Source: Prasinococcaceae sp. CCMP 1430 (lineage: Eukaryota; Plantae; Prasinodermophyta). Taken from it: 64,000 nucleotides of DNA. The stretch is from assembly GCA_013416795.1 (NCBI GenBank), contig RQSC01000006.1, forward strand, positions 1 through 64,000. The letters are read 5' to 3'. Position numbers and translations under genes: made by a program. The number at the start of each line of letters is the position of its first letter. Positions within the stretch are counted from its first letter, which is position 1. Positions 55,653 through 61,749 of the stretch are shown one piece after another. The notes under the pieces were generated by a model. It did not search any database, was not told the origin of the DNA, and saw only the letters and a list, made by a program, of their open reading frames with translations.

Positions 55653-58050
55653 TTACAATTTCGCGTCGTGCGCTGGTCTGAGCAACACAGCAGTCGCCAC
55701 ACCTGCGGCGACGGCCCCACCGCGCGCGAGGGCGCGCAGCCATCGTCGGGACGACGGTCTCGAAGCAGCGCCAGAGCGCCTACCCGCCGCGCCTCCCGTG
55801 CTGTGCGGATCCTTCGCTTTGCTATGTCGCCGCCTCCGCCTGAACGGCGCGAGGGGCAGCAGAGCAGCCGCCTTGACAGCGCGCTGCGCCGCACCAGGGC
55901 TCGAGGCAGTCGCGCCAGCACCACGATGGCCATCACCACTGCCGCTACAAGCACTGTTGTGAGCACCTCGCGTCCCGCGGTCTTTAGCCCTCATGTCCAT
56001 CACAGTCTCGACCACAGCATCGCACAGCTTGGGTCGAACGCGCAGGATCTCGTCCCCCGAGTGTCGCCACGCGCGAGGGTGCACAGCGTTGGAGAGGAGC
56101 ATAACATACATGTTGCGATCCGGGTCAATCCACAGGCTTGTGCCGGTGTAGCCCGTATGTCCGAAGCTGCGAGCGGACAGGAGGCGTCCTGCAGCGCCCT
56201 TCGCGCGGTCCTTCGCTCGCGTCGCGACGTCGAATCCCAGCGCGAATGGCCTCGGGTTGTGGCGCGTGCGCGGCGCGGCGCGTGTGAAGAGCCGGGCAGT
56301 ATCCTGCCGCACCAGCGCCCCCGGTTGCCCGGCCAGGCTCGCGAGCATGGCTTTGGCAAATTTTCCAACGTCAGCGGCCGTTGAGAACAAGCCGGCGTGC
56401 CCAGCGACACCTCCCATCAAGTAGCATGTCGGGTCGTGGACCTCGCCCCACAGGAGGCGCCCACGGCGGGTATCGACCTCCGTTGGGACCACGCGTATCG
56501 AGGGGGCAGGTGGTGGCCCGTGCCCCGCTTTGACTTTTCGGAAGTGCGTGTCAAGCATGCCGAGAGGGTCGAAGATACGTTCGCGGCAGAAGCGCTCCAG
56601 CGACATGCCTGAGCACCGCTCAATCACAATTCCAATGACAATCATGGAGAGGTCCGAGTACACTGAGCGGTGACCCGGGGGGTAGCGCGGTGGCGCCTTC
56701 ATCACGGAGTCGAGCACGCGCTTGCGGGTAGCCTCGGGGTCGGGCAACGGAGGGCCCGTGTCACTTGCATCTGTGGCGGCATCACCATCTGTGCCCACGT
56801 CAGCTGCGCGCTCGGGCTGAGATTGCCCTGCCTGCTGCTCCGACGGCGTCGAGTGACCGCCATCGCCACCCGCGTCGCTGCAGAGCAAAGCAGGCGCAGG
56901 TTCTGCACTCAGCTTTGTGACCTTTGCCTCCGGAAACGCTGCAGGGTCAGCAGTGAAGCACTCCTTGAGCCCAGCGGTGTGCGTCAGGAGCTGGCGCACT
57001 GTGAGCGCGCCTTTCCCATTCGCGGCGAACTCGGGCACGTATTTGGCCACCGGTGCGTCGAGGCTGATTGCGCCTTCCTCGTGCAGCAGCATTACTGCGG
57101 GCACTGTTGCCATTGCCTTGGTGAGTGAGGCGACGTCCCAAAGCGAGTCGGCCGTCACTGGCAGACTGGACTCGAAGGTCATCGTGCCGAGCGCGAGGCG
57201 GGCGTCAGAGGGCTCCCCTGCGCCAGCGCCCATGCCCCACGCAGCCACCGCCCCTGGAAAAGCCTGCTTGGCGATGCCCTGCCAGAGGACCTCTGCTACG
57301 TACGGGTGCTCGCTCGCGTATGAGACCTCTCGTGTTGTCTCTCGCTCCGTCACGGAAACATTTGGCACAGGCACAGGCGGAGGGCTTTCAAGTTGCTCTG
57401 TGTGCTGTGTCTGTTGCAAGCGCGCAGGTTGGGTCAGTGCACGTGCGCGGCGCTCGCTGCTTGTTGCAGCCGCATGCCTTGGCGCCGCTACAGGGTGCCC
57501 TGCGCCTCCGGTAGCTACTGCAGGCGCCTGCTCCGTACCTCATACCCTTGACCCTGCCCATGCCGCGACGCCGCTGCGTGCTGCACGCCACCCTCCCTGC
57601 GCACCAGCATACTTGCAGGCATGCTGGCGACGCCCGCTCCGGGCGGCCGAGCGGCTGCGCAGCGGCGCTCGCTCCCGGCACAGAGCGCGCCCAAGCGCTG
57701 TGCGGCCGAGCGTGCTCCACTTCCGCCCGCCCGCCGCCGCGCGGCCACCTCCCCGCGCGCGCACACACACACACACTGCAGTGCCACCACGCCAGGCGGC
57801 AGTGTGGCACACACACACACAGGCACACACACAGGCACACGCACAGGCACACGCACACACGCCCGCGCACGCACAGCCGCCGCCGGCTCCCGGCACAGCC
57901 GCCGCACTCGTCTGTGGGGTCGCTCGTTGGGTGTCGAGCGCGCAGGTGCATCGCGCACGCACGGCACACTTTTAGGAACAAACCTGTGTCATATCTACCC
58001 ACGGGAGATGCCGCGGACGGGGAGAGTGAAACCGAACAAAACTGAGTCAT
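55653..58050 (-). CDS. Beta-lactamase/PBP-like serine hydrolase (AmiE/EstB-like)
   Basis: SxxK (ASLTK), LLTHTAGL, YSD, GEVHD, GGVAGHAGLFST and GHTGYTGTSLWIDP. Model: exon 58050-57970, exon 57748-57539, exon 57410-55653. Ends in AKL. Confidence 0.88.
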
Positions 58051-58604
58051 GTTTACCGACGGGAGATCGCGCGGGCGGGTGCAGCGCGGCGGGGTCGCTG
58101 CGAGTTTGTTGGGGCGCGGCGGCGAAGGGGCGCGCGGGCGCGCCACGCCGCAGGGCGCGAACCAGCGCCCGCACGCCTCGGCGGCCCCCCGCCGCCGGCA
58201 GCGCCCGCAGTGGCGGGAAGCGGGCGGCGAGCGCGCGCGTGGCGATGAAAAATCCCCCCGAGGTGGAGGGAAAACCAAATCCCATGCGCAAAAAAGAGGG
58301 TTCGCATCGCACGAGAGGGCGGGGCCGTTCCGAGGCACTCGAAGCATCCCGGTCCGTGCAAGAGCAGCGTTGGTGGACTGTACAGTGTACGTTTACATGT
58401 ACTGCACGCTCCTTCTGTGAACCCCAAATGCCGCAGCCCCAAACCTGCGGCCGCGCGCGCGCCCGGAACCACCTCGCGGGCCAGAGTGCGCGCCGCAGCG
58501 CGCCGCCAGCCCGCACAGCCCGGACTACTACGAGAGAGGGGAGGGGCACCCCGGATCACCCCGCGAGCGCCCTCGAGAGCACCGGCCGCGGCAGCGCGCA
58601 CGCG

Positions 58605-61100
58605 TTACCTTCGGCCAAAGCCACTCGGCTGGCCAAAGCCGCCGCTGGCCTGGCCGAAGCCGCCGCCGGTCTGGCCGAAGCCGCCGCCGGCCTGGCCGAA
58701 GCCGCCGCCGGCCTGGCCGAAGCCACCGGTGGCTTGACCGAAACCGCCGCCGGCCTGGCCAAAGCCCGCGCGACCGCCTCCACCGCCGAAGCCCGCACCG
58801 CCGCCTCCCCCGCCGAAGCCGCCTCCACCTCCCCCGCCGAAGCCGCCACCGCCTCCACCCCCGCCCCCGGGCGCCTGCTCGAGATCGTCCCTGTACTTGG
58901 ATGACTCGTCGGTCAAGGCCAGGCGCGAGCCCTCTGGTTCCTCAAGGTATTTCTTGTCGTCGAGGTACGCCGATAGCCGCGCAGCAAGCACAGAGGTTTC
59001 TGTGCCCTGCCCCGCAAGCTTCGGCACGAACTCGCCGCTGATGGTAGCGAAAAGGGCAATGGCATCGTCCTTGTACGCGCGCCAGAGTGCGTGCCCGCAC
59101 GATCGCAGGACGGCGAGCACCGCGTTGGCAACCTCGCGCTTCTGTGGCAGGGCGTTGAGAGCCGCGGCAAGCCAGCGCCAAGCATCCGCCGGCATCATGC
59201 CCTCATGCTTGCCAGTGGCCATCAACGCACCGTAGAACGACATCATGCCGTACACACGCGAACAAAAGTCGTCGGTGCTCTCAGTCGTACTTGCACCGTC
59301 CTCCCCCTCCGTGGTGCGGTAGCCCGCGGCTTTCAGGTACTCCTTTTCGGTCGCAAAGCGCTCCTCAGTGTACGGCACGTACAGCGGGATGGCAATCGGG
59401 CAGCGCGCGTGGAGGCGCGCTAGCACGATGGGTCCAAAGCCTGGGTTTTGAGCCGACACTCGTGCCACTAGCTCCGCCAAAGGGAAGGCGAACGACTCGA
59501 GCCGGCGCACCTGCTCCTCGGCCTGGACGAGCGCCTTGCCTGCAGACTGCAGCATCACGTAGGACTTATGCGCTGGACTCGGGGCGTGCTGGATCAGTTC
59601 GGAGAGAGCCTTCGTCTTGGATGCCACCTGCTCCTCCGTGCCGGTCAATTGCACAACGTGCTGGATGATGGCCTTGTCTATCTTGCGGCGCTCCATCTTG
59701 GCGGAAGCGTTTGCTTTGAGCGGCGCAGCAACCTCGTTTGCCTTGACCAGCGCTTCCCGCAGCGCACCCCGACGCGCCGCTGCGGCGTCACTGACCCGAT
59801 CCTCTGTCCCCTTGATCGCCTTGGGTGTCGGACCGTTGGCTGTTTCCTGTGCATGTTGTTGTTCTTGTTGTTGCTGCTGCTGCTGCTGAGCCTGTAACTG
59901 AGCCCGCTCCTGTTCGGCCTTCTCCGCTGCGGCCTTCTGCGCCTCATCCGCTGCTCGCTGGGCGGCCTGCACCTCTGCTCGTCGTTTCTCCTCACGCTCC
60001 TTTGCCTCTGCCTCCGCCTGGCGCGCTTTCGCCTCGGCCTCCGCTCGCTCTGCTTCGCGGGCAGCAGCGGCGGCAGCCTGCGCCTCCCGAGCCTTGAGGT
60101 CGTTCACCAGAGATGCTGCCCTGGCCTCGACCTGCCTTCTGTGCTCTTCGAGCATGCGCATGCGCTCGCTGCGCGCCGCGGCGCACGCGGCATTCAACCC
60201 TGCGGCGTCCTCCAGAACGACTTGCGCACCCAGCTCAGTCTCATTCGAAATGTCCTTGGATGCGCGCTCCTCTTCCTTCTGCGCCTCCTGCAGTTGCGTT
60301 TCAAGCACCCATGCCCATCGCCTCGAGCGCTCGCGCGCGAGTGCTGCCGCCTCGCTGGCGGTGCATTGCAAGGCAGCCTCAGCAGCATCGAGCGGTTCCG
60401 CAGGCGGCGCCTCGTACGCCTGCGCCGCCGTGACTGTGGTGCGAAGTGGTGATCGCCCAACGGACGCCGGTGCACCGGCGGAGTCCTCCTCCCCCTCGTC
60501 ATCCGAGTCGCTCGGAGCGCAAATTCGCACAGCCTCGGCCTCGCCTACTGCCGCCACCGCGAGCTCGCGCACAGCAAAGCCGAAGCCGTCGCTCGTGTTG
60601 CCGTCTTCATCGTCGAAGTCGAGGTCAGCGGGCGCGCAATACCTACCCTCCGTCGCCGGCCCATGCGGGGCGGTTTGGCCGAGCGTGCGCATCAGCAGCG
60701 CCGGCGACGCCGATGGTGCGGAGGAGGACCCCACGGTGCCGAGGGGCATAAGCGACGTGAGCGGCGAGATAGGGGTGAGCGGCGACATCGGCGTGCCGAT
60801 CCCCAGCTCCCCCGCGGCCGCCGCAGCGAGCCTCGCCCCCAGAGCGTCGATCGCTGGGCTGGTGGCGCCGGGGTCGCCGCCGGCGCGCACGGCGGTGGCG
60901 GTCGACGGCGAGCGCGCGGGCAAGGGCACGCTCACGCTCGCGTCGGGGGACCCATCCCCGCCGGCGGCGGCGCACGCCGCCGGCGCACGCAGCCGCGCGC
61001 CGTCTGACGGCGTCGACGTCGGCGGCTGCTGTGTGCCGACGCTGGCAGCACCGCTGCCACACCAGCCAGGGGGGGGGGGGAACATTCGTTTTGATCTCAA
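58605..61100 (-). CDS. GLE1: mRNA export factor GLE1 with C-terminal Gly/FG-repeat tail
   Basis: Coiled-coil middle; AFPLAELV, LARLHARCPIAIPLY, GYR...ESTDDFCSRVYGMMSFYGAL, AWRWLA and GHALWRAY. Start uncertain. Confidence 0.88.
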   Translation of the reverse strand: MRSKRMFPPPPGWCGSGAASVGTQQPPTSTPSDGARLRAPAACAAAGGDGSPDASVSVPLPARSPSTATAVRAGGDPGATSPAIDALGARLAAAAAGELGIGTPMSPLTPISPLTSLMPLGTVGSSSAPSASPALLMRTLGQTAPHGPATEGRYCAPADLDFDDEDGNTSDGFGFAVRELAVAAVGEAEAVRICAPSDSDDEGEEDSAGAPASVGRSPLRTTVTAAQAYEAPPAEPLDAAEAALQCTASEAAALARERSRRWAWVLETQLQEAQKEEERASKDISNETELGAQVVLEDAAGLNAACAAARSERMRMLEEHRRQVEARAASLVNDLKAREAQAAAAAAREAERAEAEAKARQAEAEAKEREEKRRAEVQAAQRAADEAQKAAAEKAEQERAQLQAQQQQQQQQEQQHAQETANGPTPKAIKGTEDRVSDAAAARRGALREALVKANEVAAPLKANASAKMERRKIDKAIIQHVVQLTGTEEQVASKTKALSELIQHAPSPAHKSYVMLQSAGKALVQAEEQVRRLESFAFPLAELVARVSAQNPGFGPIVLARLHARCPIAIPLYVPYTEERFATEKEYLKAAGYRTTEGEDGASTTESTDDFCSRVYGMMSFYGALMATGKHEGMMPADAWRWLAAALNALPQKREVANAVLAVLRSCGHALWRAYKDDAIALFATISGEFVPKLAGQGTETSVLAARLSAYLDDKKYLEEPEGSRLALTDESSKYRDDLEQAPGGGGGGGGGFGGGGGGGFGGGGGGAGFGGGGGRAGFGQAGGGFGQATGGFGQAGGGFGQAGGGFGQTGGGFGQASGGFGQPSGFGRR
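58630..58766 (-). repeat. 21-bp tandem repeat (~7 units) encoding GFGQAGG
   Basis: ggccgaagccgccgccggcct-type units repeated with few substitutions. Confidence 0.9.
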
Positions 61101-61749
61101 CGTCTCCGGCGCACGAAGACGGGGTCTGCGAACGTTCTAGACTCGAGAGAGCGGGAGAGAGAGACTGTCTGACTGACGTTGGCCTTGAATCATGATGAAT
61201 GAAACGCGGCGTGACGTGGGGACCGACCGACGCCATGGCGGTGGTGTCATTGATCGCCCGTGGGTAGGATCATACATGATACTGATGCTGCATTACCGCA
61301 GCAGCGTTTGCAATCATTTCTCGACTGGAGCCATTATGCCGACGCGATGCGCGGAGAGTCTCCCGCCGCCAGAGCGCGCCGCGGCGCGCCGCGGCATGCC
61401 GCGCCGCTCTCCCCCACCCCACGCCGCCCCACGCCACCGCCCCGGCGGGAGTGCACTGCCCTGTGTGTTTTGAATGAACTGTGTTGGGGTTTAGGTTCGA
61501 GGGTATTGTACACCGTACTGACAGTAAAGTTGGAGTTCTGCCATGTAGGGTTCGACGCAGCGCCGTTCCCCGAGGGTACGCATGCGCCGGCGCGGGCGCA
61601 GCTCGTGCCGCTCTGCGCGCTGTCCACACCCCTTGCGCGGCGCGGGGTGGCGGCAGTGGGTCTGCGCAGGGTGTCGGCGGGGGAGTTGGCCTGGGGAATC
61701 GCGGTGCGGTGTGGTTTGCCGCTTCTCGGTGTCGCTCGGGCCTGCAGCG

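What the first reader, a model, noticed from the sequence alone, without database searches (positions are those of the whole stretch)
58395..58880. Gle1 carries its own FG-nucleoporin-like tail
Directly after the Gle1 CTD, in frame, are ~11 FG motifs (poly-Gly-FG, then 7x GFGQ from a 21-bp repeat). Gle1 normally lacks FG repeats and is docked by the FG nucleoporin Nup42/hCG1. A built-in FG tail could replace or mimic that partner and feed Mex67/NXF1-bound mRNPs to the Dbp5 remodelling site. A strong donor (AG|GTAACG) at the stop and an acceptor at ~58447 would add RFGAAAFG...M*, ending in TGTAA.
Basis: partly seen in the sequence, partly recalled or inferred. Interest (0 to 1): 0.72.

Follow-up and report, generated by a model that had tools for sequence, protein, structure and literature searches.

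The report
Gle1 gene with FG-repeat tail
The mRNA-export factor Gle1 of the green picoalga Prasinoderma coloniale continues past its normal end into a ~90-residue glycine-rich tail with 11 FG motifs, which evolves like coding sequence and is very rare among Gle1 proteins, but the published gene model splices it out and no RNA data were available to decide.

Summary
ORF 58605-61100 is a Gle1 protein (Pfam GLE1, E 9e-41). It runs in frame into a 91-residue tail with 54 Gly and 11 Phe, every Phe in GFG. The tail is built from 21-bp and 24-bp tandem repeats and ends in GFGRR-stop.

Among the 150 best Gle1 representatives, only the two Prasinoderma-clade clusters carry an FG tail. Green-algal Gle1 normally ends at ...SSYxRA.

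A 69%-identical sister lineage keeps a Gly/aromatic tail with the same GFGRR-stop end. All five nucleotide differences in the last six codons are synonymous, and the downstream DNA is unalignable. Fourteen natural variants keep the frame (9-12 FG).

Two complications:
The sister stop has no GT, the acceptor AG is missing in 3 of 7 contigs, and the mini-exon carries a 7-nt indel.
- The published model PRCOL_00001147-RA removes the whole tail with a 452-nt intron that uses the same acceptor.

Diatoms encode Gle1 + FG repeats + two CCCH fingers (Nup42-like) as one ORF, which supports the functional logic. Whether Prasinoderma has Nup42 could not be tested.

The parts
58605..61100 (-). Gle1 open reading frame, 831 codons from a mechanical TTG start. 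The true start is uncertain: first ATG at 61085, or an upstream ATG at 61396 shared with relatives.
   Evidence: P0193 (the published P. coloniale model) is 100% identical to the window over its residues 22-695.
58881..59783 (-). Gle1 C-terminal domain, the Dbp5/LOS4-activating fold (residues 440-740).
   Evidence: Pfam GLE1 E 9e-41. Human GLE1 PDB 6B4F E 2e-19. AlphaFold2 pLDDT above 90 over residues 1-~300 of this fragment.
58608..58880 (-). Gly-rich tail of 91 aa with 11 FG motifs, ending GFGRR.
   Evidence: pLDDT below 50 with no secondary structure. Conserved in the sister lineage. 14 natural variants carry 9-12 FG.
58629..58766 (.). 21-bp tandem repeat x6.6 encoding GGGFGQ(A/T) units.
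   Evidence: Copy number is polymorphic among metagenome haplotypes.
58769..58863 (.). 24-bp tandem repeat x3.8 encoding GGGGGG(G/A)F-type poly-Gly-FG units.
   Evidence: One haplotype (L012/P0204) lacks one 24-bp unit.
58605..58607 (-). Stop codon TAA after GFGRR. It overlaps a GT (AG|GTAACG).
   Evidence: The sister lineage has CGA TAG at the same place, with no GT.
58445..58896 (-). 452-nt intron of the published model PRCOL_00001147-RA (donor AA|GTACAG, acceptor CAG|G), which would delete the whole tail. Disputed here.
   Evidence: P0193 ends ...DESSK-FGAAAFGVHRRSVQYM. Against it: codon-level conservation just past the donor and at the tail end, and the acceptor is missing in L002, L008 and L009.
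58445..58608 (-). Not supported.
58393..58397 (-). TGTAA, a likely polyadenylation signal about 210 nt after the stop.
   Evidence: CATGTAA is kept in all seven contigs that reach it while the flanks carry indels.

Best explanation
The window carries the Gle1 gene of Prasinoderma coloniale. A canonical Gle1 (coiled-coil N-terminal half plus the helical C-terminal domain that activates the DEAD-box helicase Dbp5/LOS4) is extended beyond the usual green-lineage C-terminus (...PEG..L..TDxSS(K)YR) by a translated, intrinsically disordered tail. The tail is almost uncharged and very dense in FG: 11 GFG in about 75 residues, roughly one per 7 residues. It ends in a conserved GFGRR-COOH. The tail grows and shrinks by slippage of 21- and 24-bp repeats, while the FG cores and the terminal motif are held by selection. 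Inferred function: it places a cohesive FG domain in cis on Gle1 at the cytoplasmic mRNA-export platform. Nup42/hCG1 normally does this in trans, by docking its FG repeats onto the Gle1 C-terminal domain through its Gle1-binding motif. The tail would either capture Mex67/NXF1-type receptor-bound mRNPs next to the Dbp5 activation site or partition Gle1 into the FG phase. Shown: the ORF, the composition, the predicted disorder, the lineage restriction and the coding-type conservation. Inferred: translation in the major mRNA isoform, nuclear-pore localisation, receptor binding, and any replacement of Nup42.
For: Gle1 identity. Tail anatomy and non-random FG content. Disorder: pLDDT below 50 over fragment residues 312-392. 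Lineage restriction: of the 150 best representatives among 1.84 billion proteins, only the P0002 cluster (Prasinoderma clade; the window's own cluster is represented by P0001) has an FG tail. 107 representatives with a complete C-terminal domain have a median tail length of 0 and end ...SSYxRA. Named members include Bathycoccus, Auxenochlorella, Mesotaenium, Closterium and angiosperms. Coding-type conservation against the sister lineage (L001, 69% aa identity): just past the annotated donor the codons read Y (synonymous), R/T, D/E, D/E, L (synonymous), E. The last six codons, G F G R R stop, differ at 5 nucleotides and all changes are synonymous. The 600 nt downstream show no colinear similarity. 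Population data: 14 protein variants have tails of 80-101 aa and 9-12 FG, and all end GFGRR. Indels in the tail are 21- or 24-nt units. F codons show synonymous changes only, and spacers change. The short downstream stretch carries 1-nt and 7-nt indels. Functional logic: Lin et al. 2018 (PMC5998080) state that the Nup42 Gle1-binding motif anchors FG repeats proximal to Gle1. Diatom proteins P0003 and P0004 are single ORFs of Gle1 + FG repeats + two CCCH fingers. Their C-terminal part is nearest to Nup42-family clusters by language-model features, at score 0.83, which is a lead only.
Against: The published annotation PRCOL_00001147-RA (P0193) removes the entire tail with a GT..AG intron, and the annotation pipeline used transcript evidence (PMC7455551). 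No RNA reads were available, and no transcript-derived protein fragments were found. In-frame indels are expected from repeat units of 21 and 24 bp whether or not the region is coding. The sister-lineage tail has only 4 FG, plus WG and RGG motifs, so what is conserved may be Gly/aromatic low complexity rather than FG as such. The FG spacing (about 7 aa) is much tighter than in typical FG nucleoporins. No Pfam family matches the tail. The presence or absence of Nup42 in this genome is unknown.
Confidence: 0.5

Rival explanations
1. The published gene model is right. A 452-nt intron (58896 to 58445) is removed from most or all mRNA, so the mature Gle1 ends ...DESSK-FGAAAFGVHRRSVQYM and has no FG tail. 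The open frame through the repeat would then be a by-product of GC richness and 3n repeat units. A softer version is alternative splicing giving tail-plus and tail-minus isoforms, as human Gle1A and Gle1B differ at the C-terminus.
For: P0193 (EukProt P. coloniale, PRCOL_00001147-RA) has exactly this junction and is otherwise 100% identical to the window. MAKER was run with PASA/Bridger transcripts. GT and AG are present. From base composition at ~68% GC I estimate about a 14% chance of 91 stop-free codons (my own arithmetic, not a tool result). Human GLE1 has C-terminal splice isoforms with different pore targeting (PMC2172758, abstract).
Against: The donor cuts between K and Y, yet Y-x-[DE]-[DE]-L-E just after it is conserved with synonymous changes in the sister lineage, and the Y matches the canonical ...SSYxRA end of green-algal Gle1. 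AlphaFold places a terminal helix across this point. GFGRR-stop is conserved by synonymous changes only, while flanking non-coding DNA is unalignable. The acceptor AG is replaced by CCGCG in 3 of 7 natural contigs whose tail ORF is intact. The donor lacks G at +5 and G at -1. Gene predictors commonly turn masked low-complexity repeats into introns (general knowledge, not tested here).
Confidence: 0.2
2. The tail is translated but is not nucleoporin-like. It is a Gly/aromatic (RGG/FG/WG) low-complexity domain of the kind found on RNA-binding proteins and helicase cofactors. It would promote RNA binding, Gle1 self-association or condensate (stress-granule) partitioning rather than binding to transport receptors.
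For: The sister-lineage tail contains GRGGWG, GGRGWG and AGRGTGG alongside only 4 FG. Gly makes up 59% of the window tail and the period is 7 aa. GGFGQ resembles [G/S]Y[G/S]Q motifs of prion-like domains (general knowledge). Gle1 has documented roles in self-association and stress granules (PMC7864074, abstract).
Against: The window tail has only 3 Arg and no RGG. All 11 aromatic residues are Phe in GFG. F codons change only synonymously in the population. Gle1 sits at the pore next to FG repeats in other eukaryotes, and diatoms fuse it to a clearly nucleoporin-type PSPFG/GGFGQ region.
Confidence: 0.2
3. The tail is translated but functionally neutral: a slippage-driven low-complexity expansion tolerated at a permissive C-terminus of a protein in a 68% GC genome.
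For: Tandem 21- and 24-bp repeats with copy-number polymorphism. Spacer residues vary freely. Eudicot GLE1 proteins carry unrelated Tyr/Gln/His-rich C-terminal tails, so this end tolerates additions. Another scan note reports an FG-like tail on Nup188 in the same genome (s1-381943, unchecked).
Against: The tail persists across lineages whose non-coding DNA is unalignable, with a conserved terminal motif reached by synonymous changes. F is invariant in 14 variants. No comparable FG cluster occurs elsewhere in the 64-kb window in any frame.
Confidence: 0.07
4. One reading: a 164-nt intron starting at the stop (AG|GTAACG) is spliced to the CAG|G acceptor at 58446/58445, extending the tail by RFGAAAFGVHRRSVQYM.
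For: Donor and acceptor motifs exist, and the joined frame reads two more FG before a stop inside ATGTAA. The published model uses the same acceptor.
Against: The sister lineage stops at the same residue with CGA TAG and no GT. The acceptor AG is absent in L002, L008 and L009. The mini-exon has a 7-nt insertion in L004, a 3-nt insertion in L011 and substitutions in L008/L009. Diatom Gle1-FG fusions also end in ...PRR.
Confidence: 0.03

Closest known systems
[quoted passage not shown]
   Same: FG repeats are held directly next to the Gle1 C-terminal domain, which activates Dbp5/DDX19. Lin et al. 2018 (PMC5998080) say explicitly that the Nup42 Gle1-binding motif anchors FG repeats proximal to Gle1.
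   Different: Here the FG stretch is part of the Gle1 polypeptide. It has no CCCH finger and no Gle1-binding motif, is only about 90 aa long, is 59% Gly, and has one FG per 7 residues. It is not a Nup42 family member.
Diatom Gle1-FG-CCCH fusion proteins (P0003, P0004 = Thalassiosira profunda KAL9187286.1, P0214), found here
   Same: The Gle1 domain is followed in the same ORF by an FG-rich disordered region that includes GGFGQ-type units, and these proteins also end in ...FGGPRR.
   Different: The diatom tails are about 370-400 aa, mostly PSPFG/NPFG type, and contain two C-x7/8-C-x5-C-x3-H fingers (Nup42-like). Their Gle1 domains are only about 25% identical to the window's, so the two fusions are probably independent.
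Human GLE1A / GLE1B C-terminal splice isoforms
   Same: Alternative 3' splicing changes the Gle1 C-terminus and, with it, the link to the FG nucleoporin hCG1/Nup42 and to the pore (PMC2172758). The conflict between the unspliced ORF and the published spliced model could reflect a similar switch.
   Different: In human the variable segment is a folded Nup42-binding part of the domain, not an FG repeat. No isoform data exist for Prasinoderma.
Canonical green-lineage GLE1 (Arabidopsis GLE1/LOS4 system; Bathycoccus, Auxenochlorella, Mesotaenium orthologues)
   Same: The same C-terminal domain at 32-39% identity, and the same ...EPEG..(M/L)P..D.SS.. end motif.
   Different: These proteins stop 3-5 residues after SS (..Y[DN]RA). 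Eudicots add 14-25 residues rich in Tyr/Gln/His/Arg. None has FG repeats.

Membership tests
Gle1 (PF07817, mRNA export factor / Dbp5 activator) | GLE1 domain detectable by profile above the curated threshold | tested here: met
   140.2 bits against a cut-off of 24, E 9.2e-41, residues 455-687.
Gle1 (PF07817, mRNA export factor / Dbp5 activator) | All-helical C-terminal domain fold related to solved Gle1 structures | tested here: met
   phmmer to human GLE1 6B4F/7TBL, E 2e-19. The AlphaFold2 model has mean pLDDT above 90 over the domain and is all helical. No structural superposition was run.
Gle1 (PF07817, mRNA export factor / Dbp5 activator) | Orthology with green-lineage GLE1 (best hits are GLE1 of green algae and plants) | tested here: met
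   The top representatives are named GLE1 in Bathycoccus, Auxenochlorella, Mesotaenium, Closterium and angiosperms.
Gle1 (PF07817, mRNA export factor / Dbp5 activator) | Stimulates Dbp5/LOS4 ATPase, with or without InsP6 | not testable with these tools
   Biochemical assay needed.
FG-nucleoporin domain (functional class) | Multiple FG motifs in a low-complexity, low-charge segment | tested here: met
   11 FG in 91 aa, with 3 R and 1 E as the only charged residues. The spacing of about 7 aa is atypically dense.
FG-nucleoporin domain (functional class) | Intrinsic disorder | tested here: met
   pLDDT 35-46 and no secondary structure over the tail. This is a prediction only.
FG-nucleoporin domain (functional class) | Match to a curated FG-repeat family | tested here: not met
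   No Pfam hit for the tail even at E up to 10. No usable ESM Atlas hit.
FG-nucleoporin domain (functional class) | Located at the pore and binds nuclear transport receptors through Phe | not testable with these tools
   Pore location is inferred only from Gle1's known location in yeast, human and plants.
Nup42 / hCG1 / Amo1 | N-terminal CCCH zinc finger (zf-CCCH_4 / Amo1_N) | tested here: not met
   Only GLE1 is found in the window protein. The diatom fusions do have two CCCH fingers.
Nup42 / hCG1 / Amo1 | C-terminal Gle1-binding motif (NUP42_C) | tested here: inconclusive
   No hit, but the local Pfam copy may lack PF27899, which was seen only in the Atlas listing. A cis fusion would not need this motif.
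Nup42 / hCG1 / Amo1 | A separate Nup42 gene present or absent in the P. coloniale genome | not testable with these tools
   No whole-genome or proteome search of this organism was available. Findings look-ups for Nup42 and CCCH were blank.

The most novel reading that the evidence does not exclude
Covalent attachment of an FG domain to Gle1 has arisen at least twice: in Prasinodermophyta as a minimal Gly-FG tail, and in diatoms as a full Gle1::Nup42-like fusion with CCCH fingers. This would be a natural Rosetta-stone fusion showing that the core job of Nup42 is to hold FG repeats beside the Dbp5 activator. In Prasinoderma the tail may have replaced Nup42 altogether, possibly switched on and off by the 452-nt alternative intron.
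Probability: 0.25. Interest if true: 0.7.

Novelty: new variant of a known kind. Interest (0 to 1): 0.5.

Why it matters
Structural work concluded that Nup42 both stabilises Gle1 and anchors FG repeats next to it, but the importance of that proximity is hard to isolate genetically. Natural proteins in which the FG repeats are part of Gle1 itself give a direct, testable argument that proximity is the selected property, and they offer a minimal system for asking what FG repeats contribute to the last step of mRNA export. The case is also a practical warning: the public gene model of P. coloniale deletes a conserved low-complexity coding segment, or else reveals an isoform switch. This kind of region is systematically lost in annotations of GC-rich algae.

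Tried and rejected
2. Transcript-derived protein fragments (for example MMETSP). A search with the last 231 residues found none.
3. Word-index searches restricted to the Gle1 domain found only the two Prasinoderma-clade clusters. The broad picture therefore rests on the exhaustive HMMER search, of which only the best 150 of 665 hits could be inspected. FG tails among the weaker hits, such as the diatoms, are under-sampled.
4. JGI metagenome scan.
5. Findings look-ups for Nup42, nucleoporin and CCCH in this genome were blank.
6. Literature searches for a natural Gle1-FG or Gle1-Nup42 fusion found nothing in the held library.
7. The ESM Atlas gave no usable hit for the tail.
8. Pfam gave nothing for the tail or for the ORFs downstream of the sister-lineage gene.
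9. The spliced product was examined only through the database protein P0193, by reference.
10. I did not derive a splice-site consensus for this genome, so splice-site strength is judged only against the general GTRAGT/YAG pattern.
Full report
WHAT IS THERE

The feature lies on the minus strand. The mechanical ORF 58605..61100 (-) has 831 codons. It carries a Pfam GLE1 domain at residues 455-687 (E 9.2e-41) and matches the human GLE1 C-terminal domain in PDB 6B4F/7TBL (E 2e-19).

After ...EEPEGSRLALTDESSKYRDDL the frame continues for 91 residues (window 58608-58880). These comprise 54 Gly, 11 Phe, 8 Gln, 8 Ala, 3 Arg, and 2 each of Pro, Thr and Ser, plus 1 Glu. Every Phe sits in GFG and seven are GFGQ. 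The protein ends in GFGRR, followed by TAA.

- Shuffling the tail residues gives a mean of 6.5 FG, and 0.2% of shuffles reach 11.
- Tandem Repeats Finder reports a 21-bp unit x6.6 (58629-58766) and a 24-bp unit x3.8 (58769-58863).
- A six-frame scan of the whole 64-kb window finds no other stop-free 90-aa stretch with even 4 FG. This is therefore not a generic by-product of the 62-74% GC composition.
- An AlphaFold2 model built on 71 Gle1 sequences gives pLDDT above 90 for the helical domain. The tail scores 35-46 with no secondary structure.

WHOSE GENE IT IS

The EukProt protein PRCOL_00001147-RA of Prasinoderma coloniale (P0193) is 100% identical to the window from its residue 22 to 695. 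This fits an earlier scan note that named this organism. The window is therefore P. coloniale or a near-identical strain.

IS THE TAIL USUAL FOR GLE1?

It is not. An exhaustive HMMER search with the domain alone, against 1.84 billion representatives, gave 665 hits, of which the best 150 were listed. I projected the end of the domain onto each hit.

- The 107 hits with a complete domain have a median tail length of zero. They end in the motif ...EPEGR.MP..D.SSY.RA.
- Named members include Bathycoccus prasinos, Auxenochlorella, Mesotaenium, Closterium, Amborella, Nymphaea and several eudicots.
- Only the P0002 cluster has an FG tail. The window's own 90% cluster, represented by P0001, has one too.
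- Eudicot GLE1 proteins carry a different, short (14-25 aa) Tyr/Gln/His/Arg-rich tail.

The FG tail is thus a lineage-specific addition at exactly the canonical C-terminus (alignment).

IS IT CODING? COMPARATIVE EVIDENCE

I relied on relatives instead.

(a) Sister lineage. P0002 comes from TARA metagenome contig L001 and is 69% identical in the domain.
- It has a 63-residue Gly-rich tail with WG, RGG and four FG motifs, and the same end, GFGRR-stop.
- At codon level, the residues just after DESS(K/Q) read Y (TAC/TAT, synonymous), R/T, D/E, D/E, L (CTC/CTT, synonymous), E.
- The last six codons (G F G R R stop) differ at five nucleotides. All five changes are synonymous, counting TAA to TAG.
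- At this distance the 600 nt downstream show no colinear similarity, whereas the domain aligns at 72.6%.

(b) Population variants. Fourteen distinct protein variants of the P. coloniale cluster, mostly from TARA metagenomes, have tails of 80-101 residues and 9-12 FG, and all end in GFGRR.
- In nine DNA haplotypes every tail length is a multiple of three.
- The two changes in F codons are synonymous. Six replacements fall at other tail positions: four in Q/A/T/I spacer residues and two in the S/G residues just before FG.
- The caveat is that unit lengths of 21 and 24 bp make in-frame indels likely in any case.
- By contrast, the roughly 250 nt after the stop carry 1-nt, 7-nt and 3-nt indels among the same contigs.

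Together this argues that the tail, and in particular its first residues and its GFGRR end, are under protein-level selection.

The motifs exist: AG|GTAACG at the stop, CAG|G at 58446/58445, and the reading RFGAAAFGVHRRSVQYM-stop. Their use is not supported.
- The sister lineage stops at the same residue with CGA TAG and no GT.
- The acceptor AG is replaced by CCGCG in L002, L008 and L009. It is present in the window, L003, L004 and L011.
- The mini-exon has a 7-nt insertion in L004, a 3-nt insertion in L011 and substitutions in L008/L009.
- TGTAA at 58393-58397 (-) is kept in all of these contigs and lies about 210 nt after the stop. That fits a polyadenylation signal in an ordinary 3' UTR.

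THE PUBLISHED MODEL REMOVES THE TAIL

P0193 ends ...LTDESSK-FGAAAFGVHRRSVQYM. This requires a 452-nt intron from AA|GTACAG (58896/58895) to the same CAG|G acceptor. The annotation used MAKER with PASA/Bridger transcripts, AUGUSTUS and GeneMark (PMC7455551), so it cannot be dismissed.

Several points count against it as the main form:
- The donor cuts just before the conserved Y. This Y matches the Y of the canonical SSYxRA end and is conserved synonymously in the sister lineage.
- The model predicts a helix across that point.
- The acceptor is missing in three natural contigs whose tail ORF is intact.
- The donor lacks the usual G at -1 and at +5.

A plausible origin of the annotated intron is a predictor bridging a masked tandem repeat. 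This is general experience and was not tested here. An alternative-isoform reading is also possible and would echo human GLE1A/B (PMC2172758). I put about 0.2 on the spliced form being the main product.

THE DIATOM LEAD

The first word search also pulled out P0003 and P0004 (Thalassiosira profunda KAL9187286.1).
- They have a Gle1 domain, then about 370-400 residues of PSPFG/NPFG/GGFGQ repeats, with two C-x7/8-C-x5-C-x3-H fingers embedded (Pfam zf-CCCH_4 and zf-CCCH, E 1e-17 to 1e-21).
- They end in ...NPFGGPRR.
- On a 1.45-Mb contig and on a 3.6-kb contig the whole protein is one uninterrupted ORF.
- By language-model features this C-terminal part is nearest to clusters carrying Amo1_N, zf-CCCH_4 and NUP42_C, that is, the Nup42 family. 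The score is 0.83, a lead rather than a test.

CCCH finger plus FG repeats is the Nup42/hCG1 architecture (general knowledge). These proteins therefore look like Gle1::Nup42-type fusions. Their Gle1 domains are only about 25% identical to the window's, so the two cases are probably independent. I found no description of either in the held literature.

HOW IT MOST LIKELY WORKS

[quoted passage not shown] The Prasinoderma tail would achieve that proximity covalently.
- It is uncharged and Gly/Gln/Ala/Thr-spaced, like cohesive FG domains.
- It could hold Mex67/NXF1-bound mRNPs at the site where Gle1 activates Dbp5/LOS4, or it could partition Gle1 into the FG phase.

This function is an inference. 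The sister tail's RGG/WG content and the very tight 7-residue period leave room for a more generic Gly/aromatic condensate or RNA-binding role. Whether Nup42 is absent from the genome could not be tested with the tools available.

VERDICT

It is a lineage-specific variant of Gle1 with a selected FG-rich tail ending in GFGRR. The extra exon is rejected. The conflict with the published spliced model is unresolved for lack of RNA data. The Nup42-mimic idea is plausible, is supported by an independent diatom fusion, and is untested. I file it as a new variant of a known kind, with interest 0.5.

PROCEDURE NOTES

The joined spliced sequence was neither built nor searched; only the database protein P0193 was used, by reference.

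Noticed in passing
L007:3001-6279 (+), L006:179-3481 (+); proteins P0003, P0004, P0214: Diatom genes (Thalassiosira profunda and relatives) encode Gle1 + about 400 aa of FG repeats + two CCCH zinc fingers as one uninterrupted ORF. This looks like a natural Gle1::Nup42-like fusion, and I found no description of it in the held literature.
   Followed up: partly
C-termini of the window protein, P0002, P0003 and P0004: All Gle1-FG proteins found end in Arg-Arg after a last FG (GFGRR, GFGGFGRR, NPFGGPRR), although the green and diatom Gle1 domains are only about 25% identical. Canonical green Gle1 ends ..Y(D/N)RA. The meaning of the terminal RR is unexplained.
   Followed up: no
window 60915-61396 (-) compared with L002:2990-3100: The 5' end of the gene differs from the 98% relative and from the published protein. 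After a shared ATGCCGCGGCGCGCCGCGGCGCGC, the window has about 450 nt where L002 has about 85 nt. The N-terminal peptide MEFEEVQTPPSVGG... of P0193/P0001 is not encoded anywhere in the window. Possible causes are a structural variant, an insertion or an assembly difference, so the true start codon in the window is uncertain.
   Followed up: partly
P0059, P0061, P0071, P0085, P0087, P0075, P0090 (eudicot GLE1): Eudicot GLE1 proteins carry a 14-25 residue Tyr/Gln/His/Asn/Arg-rich C-terminal tail that is absent in Amborella, Nymphaea and green algae. This is a second, different aromatic low-complexity addition at the same end of Gle1.
   Followed up: partly
L001:5239-5499 (+): In the sister lineage an 85-codon ORF starts with ATG immediately after the Gle1 TAG stop and lies in the same frame. 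It has no Pfam match and no counterpart downstream of the window gene.
   Followed up: partly
window 55653-55657 (-) and 58393-58397 (-): TGTAA occurs only 19 times in 64 kb, which is about the chance level. Even so, it sits at or just after the ends of both neighbouring minus-strand genes and overlaps the stop of the 55653-57419 ORF. This fits the green-algal polyadenylation signal.
   Followed up: no
window 57760-57860: A (CA)n/CACAGG microsatellite lies in the intergenic region downstream of Gle1. Several metagenome contigs of the relatives end about 460 nt after the Gle1 stop, and I did not check whether this lies near the microsatellite.
   Followed up: no
same genome, another piece (scan note s1-381943): Another first-stage note reports Nup188 with an N-terminal FG-repeat tail in this genome. 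If real, scaffold or accessory pore proteins of Prasinoderma may carry FG add-ons more generally. I did not check this.
   Followed up: no
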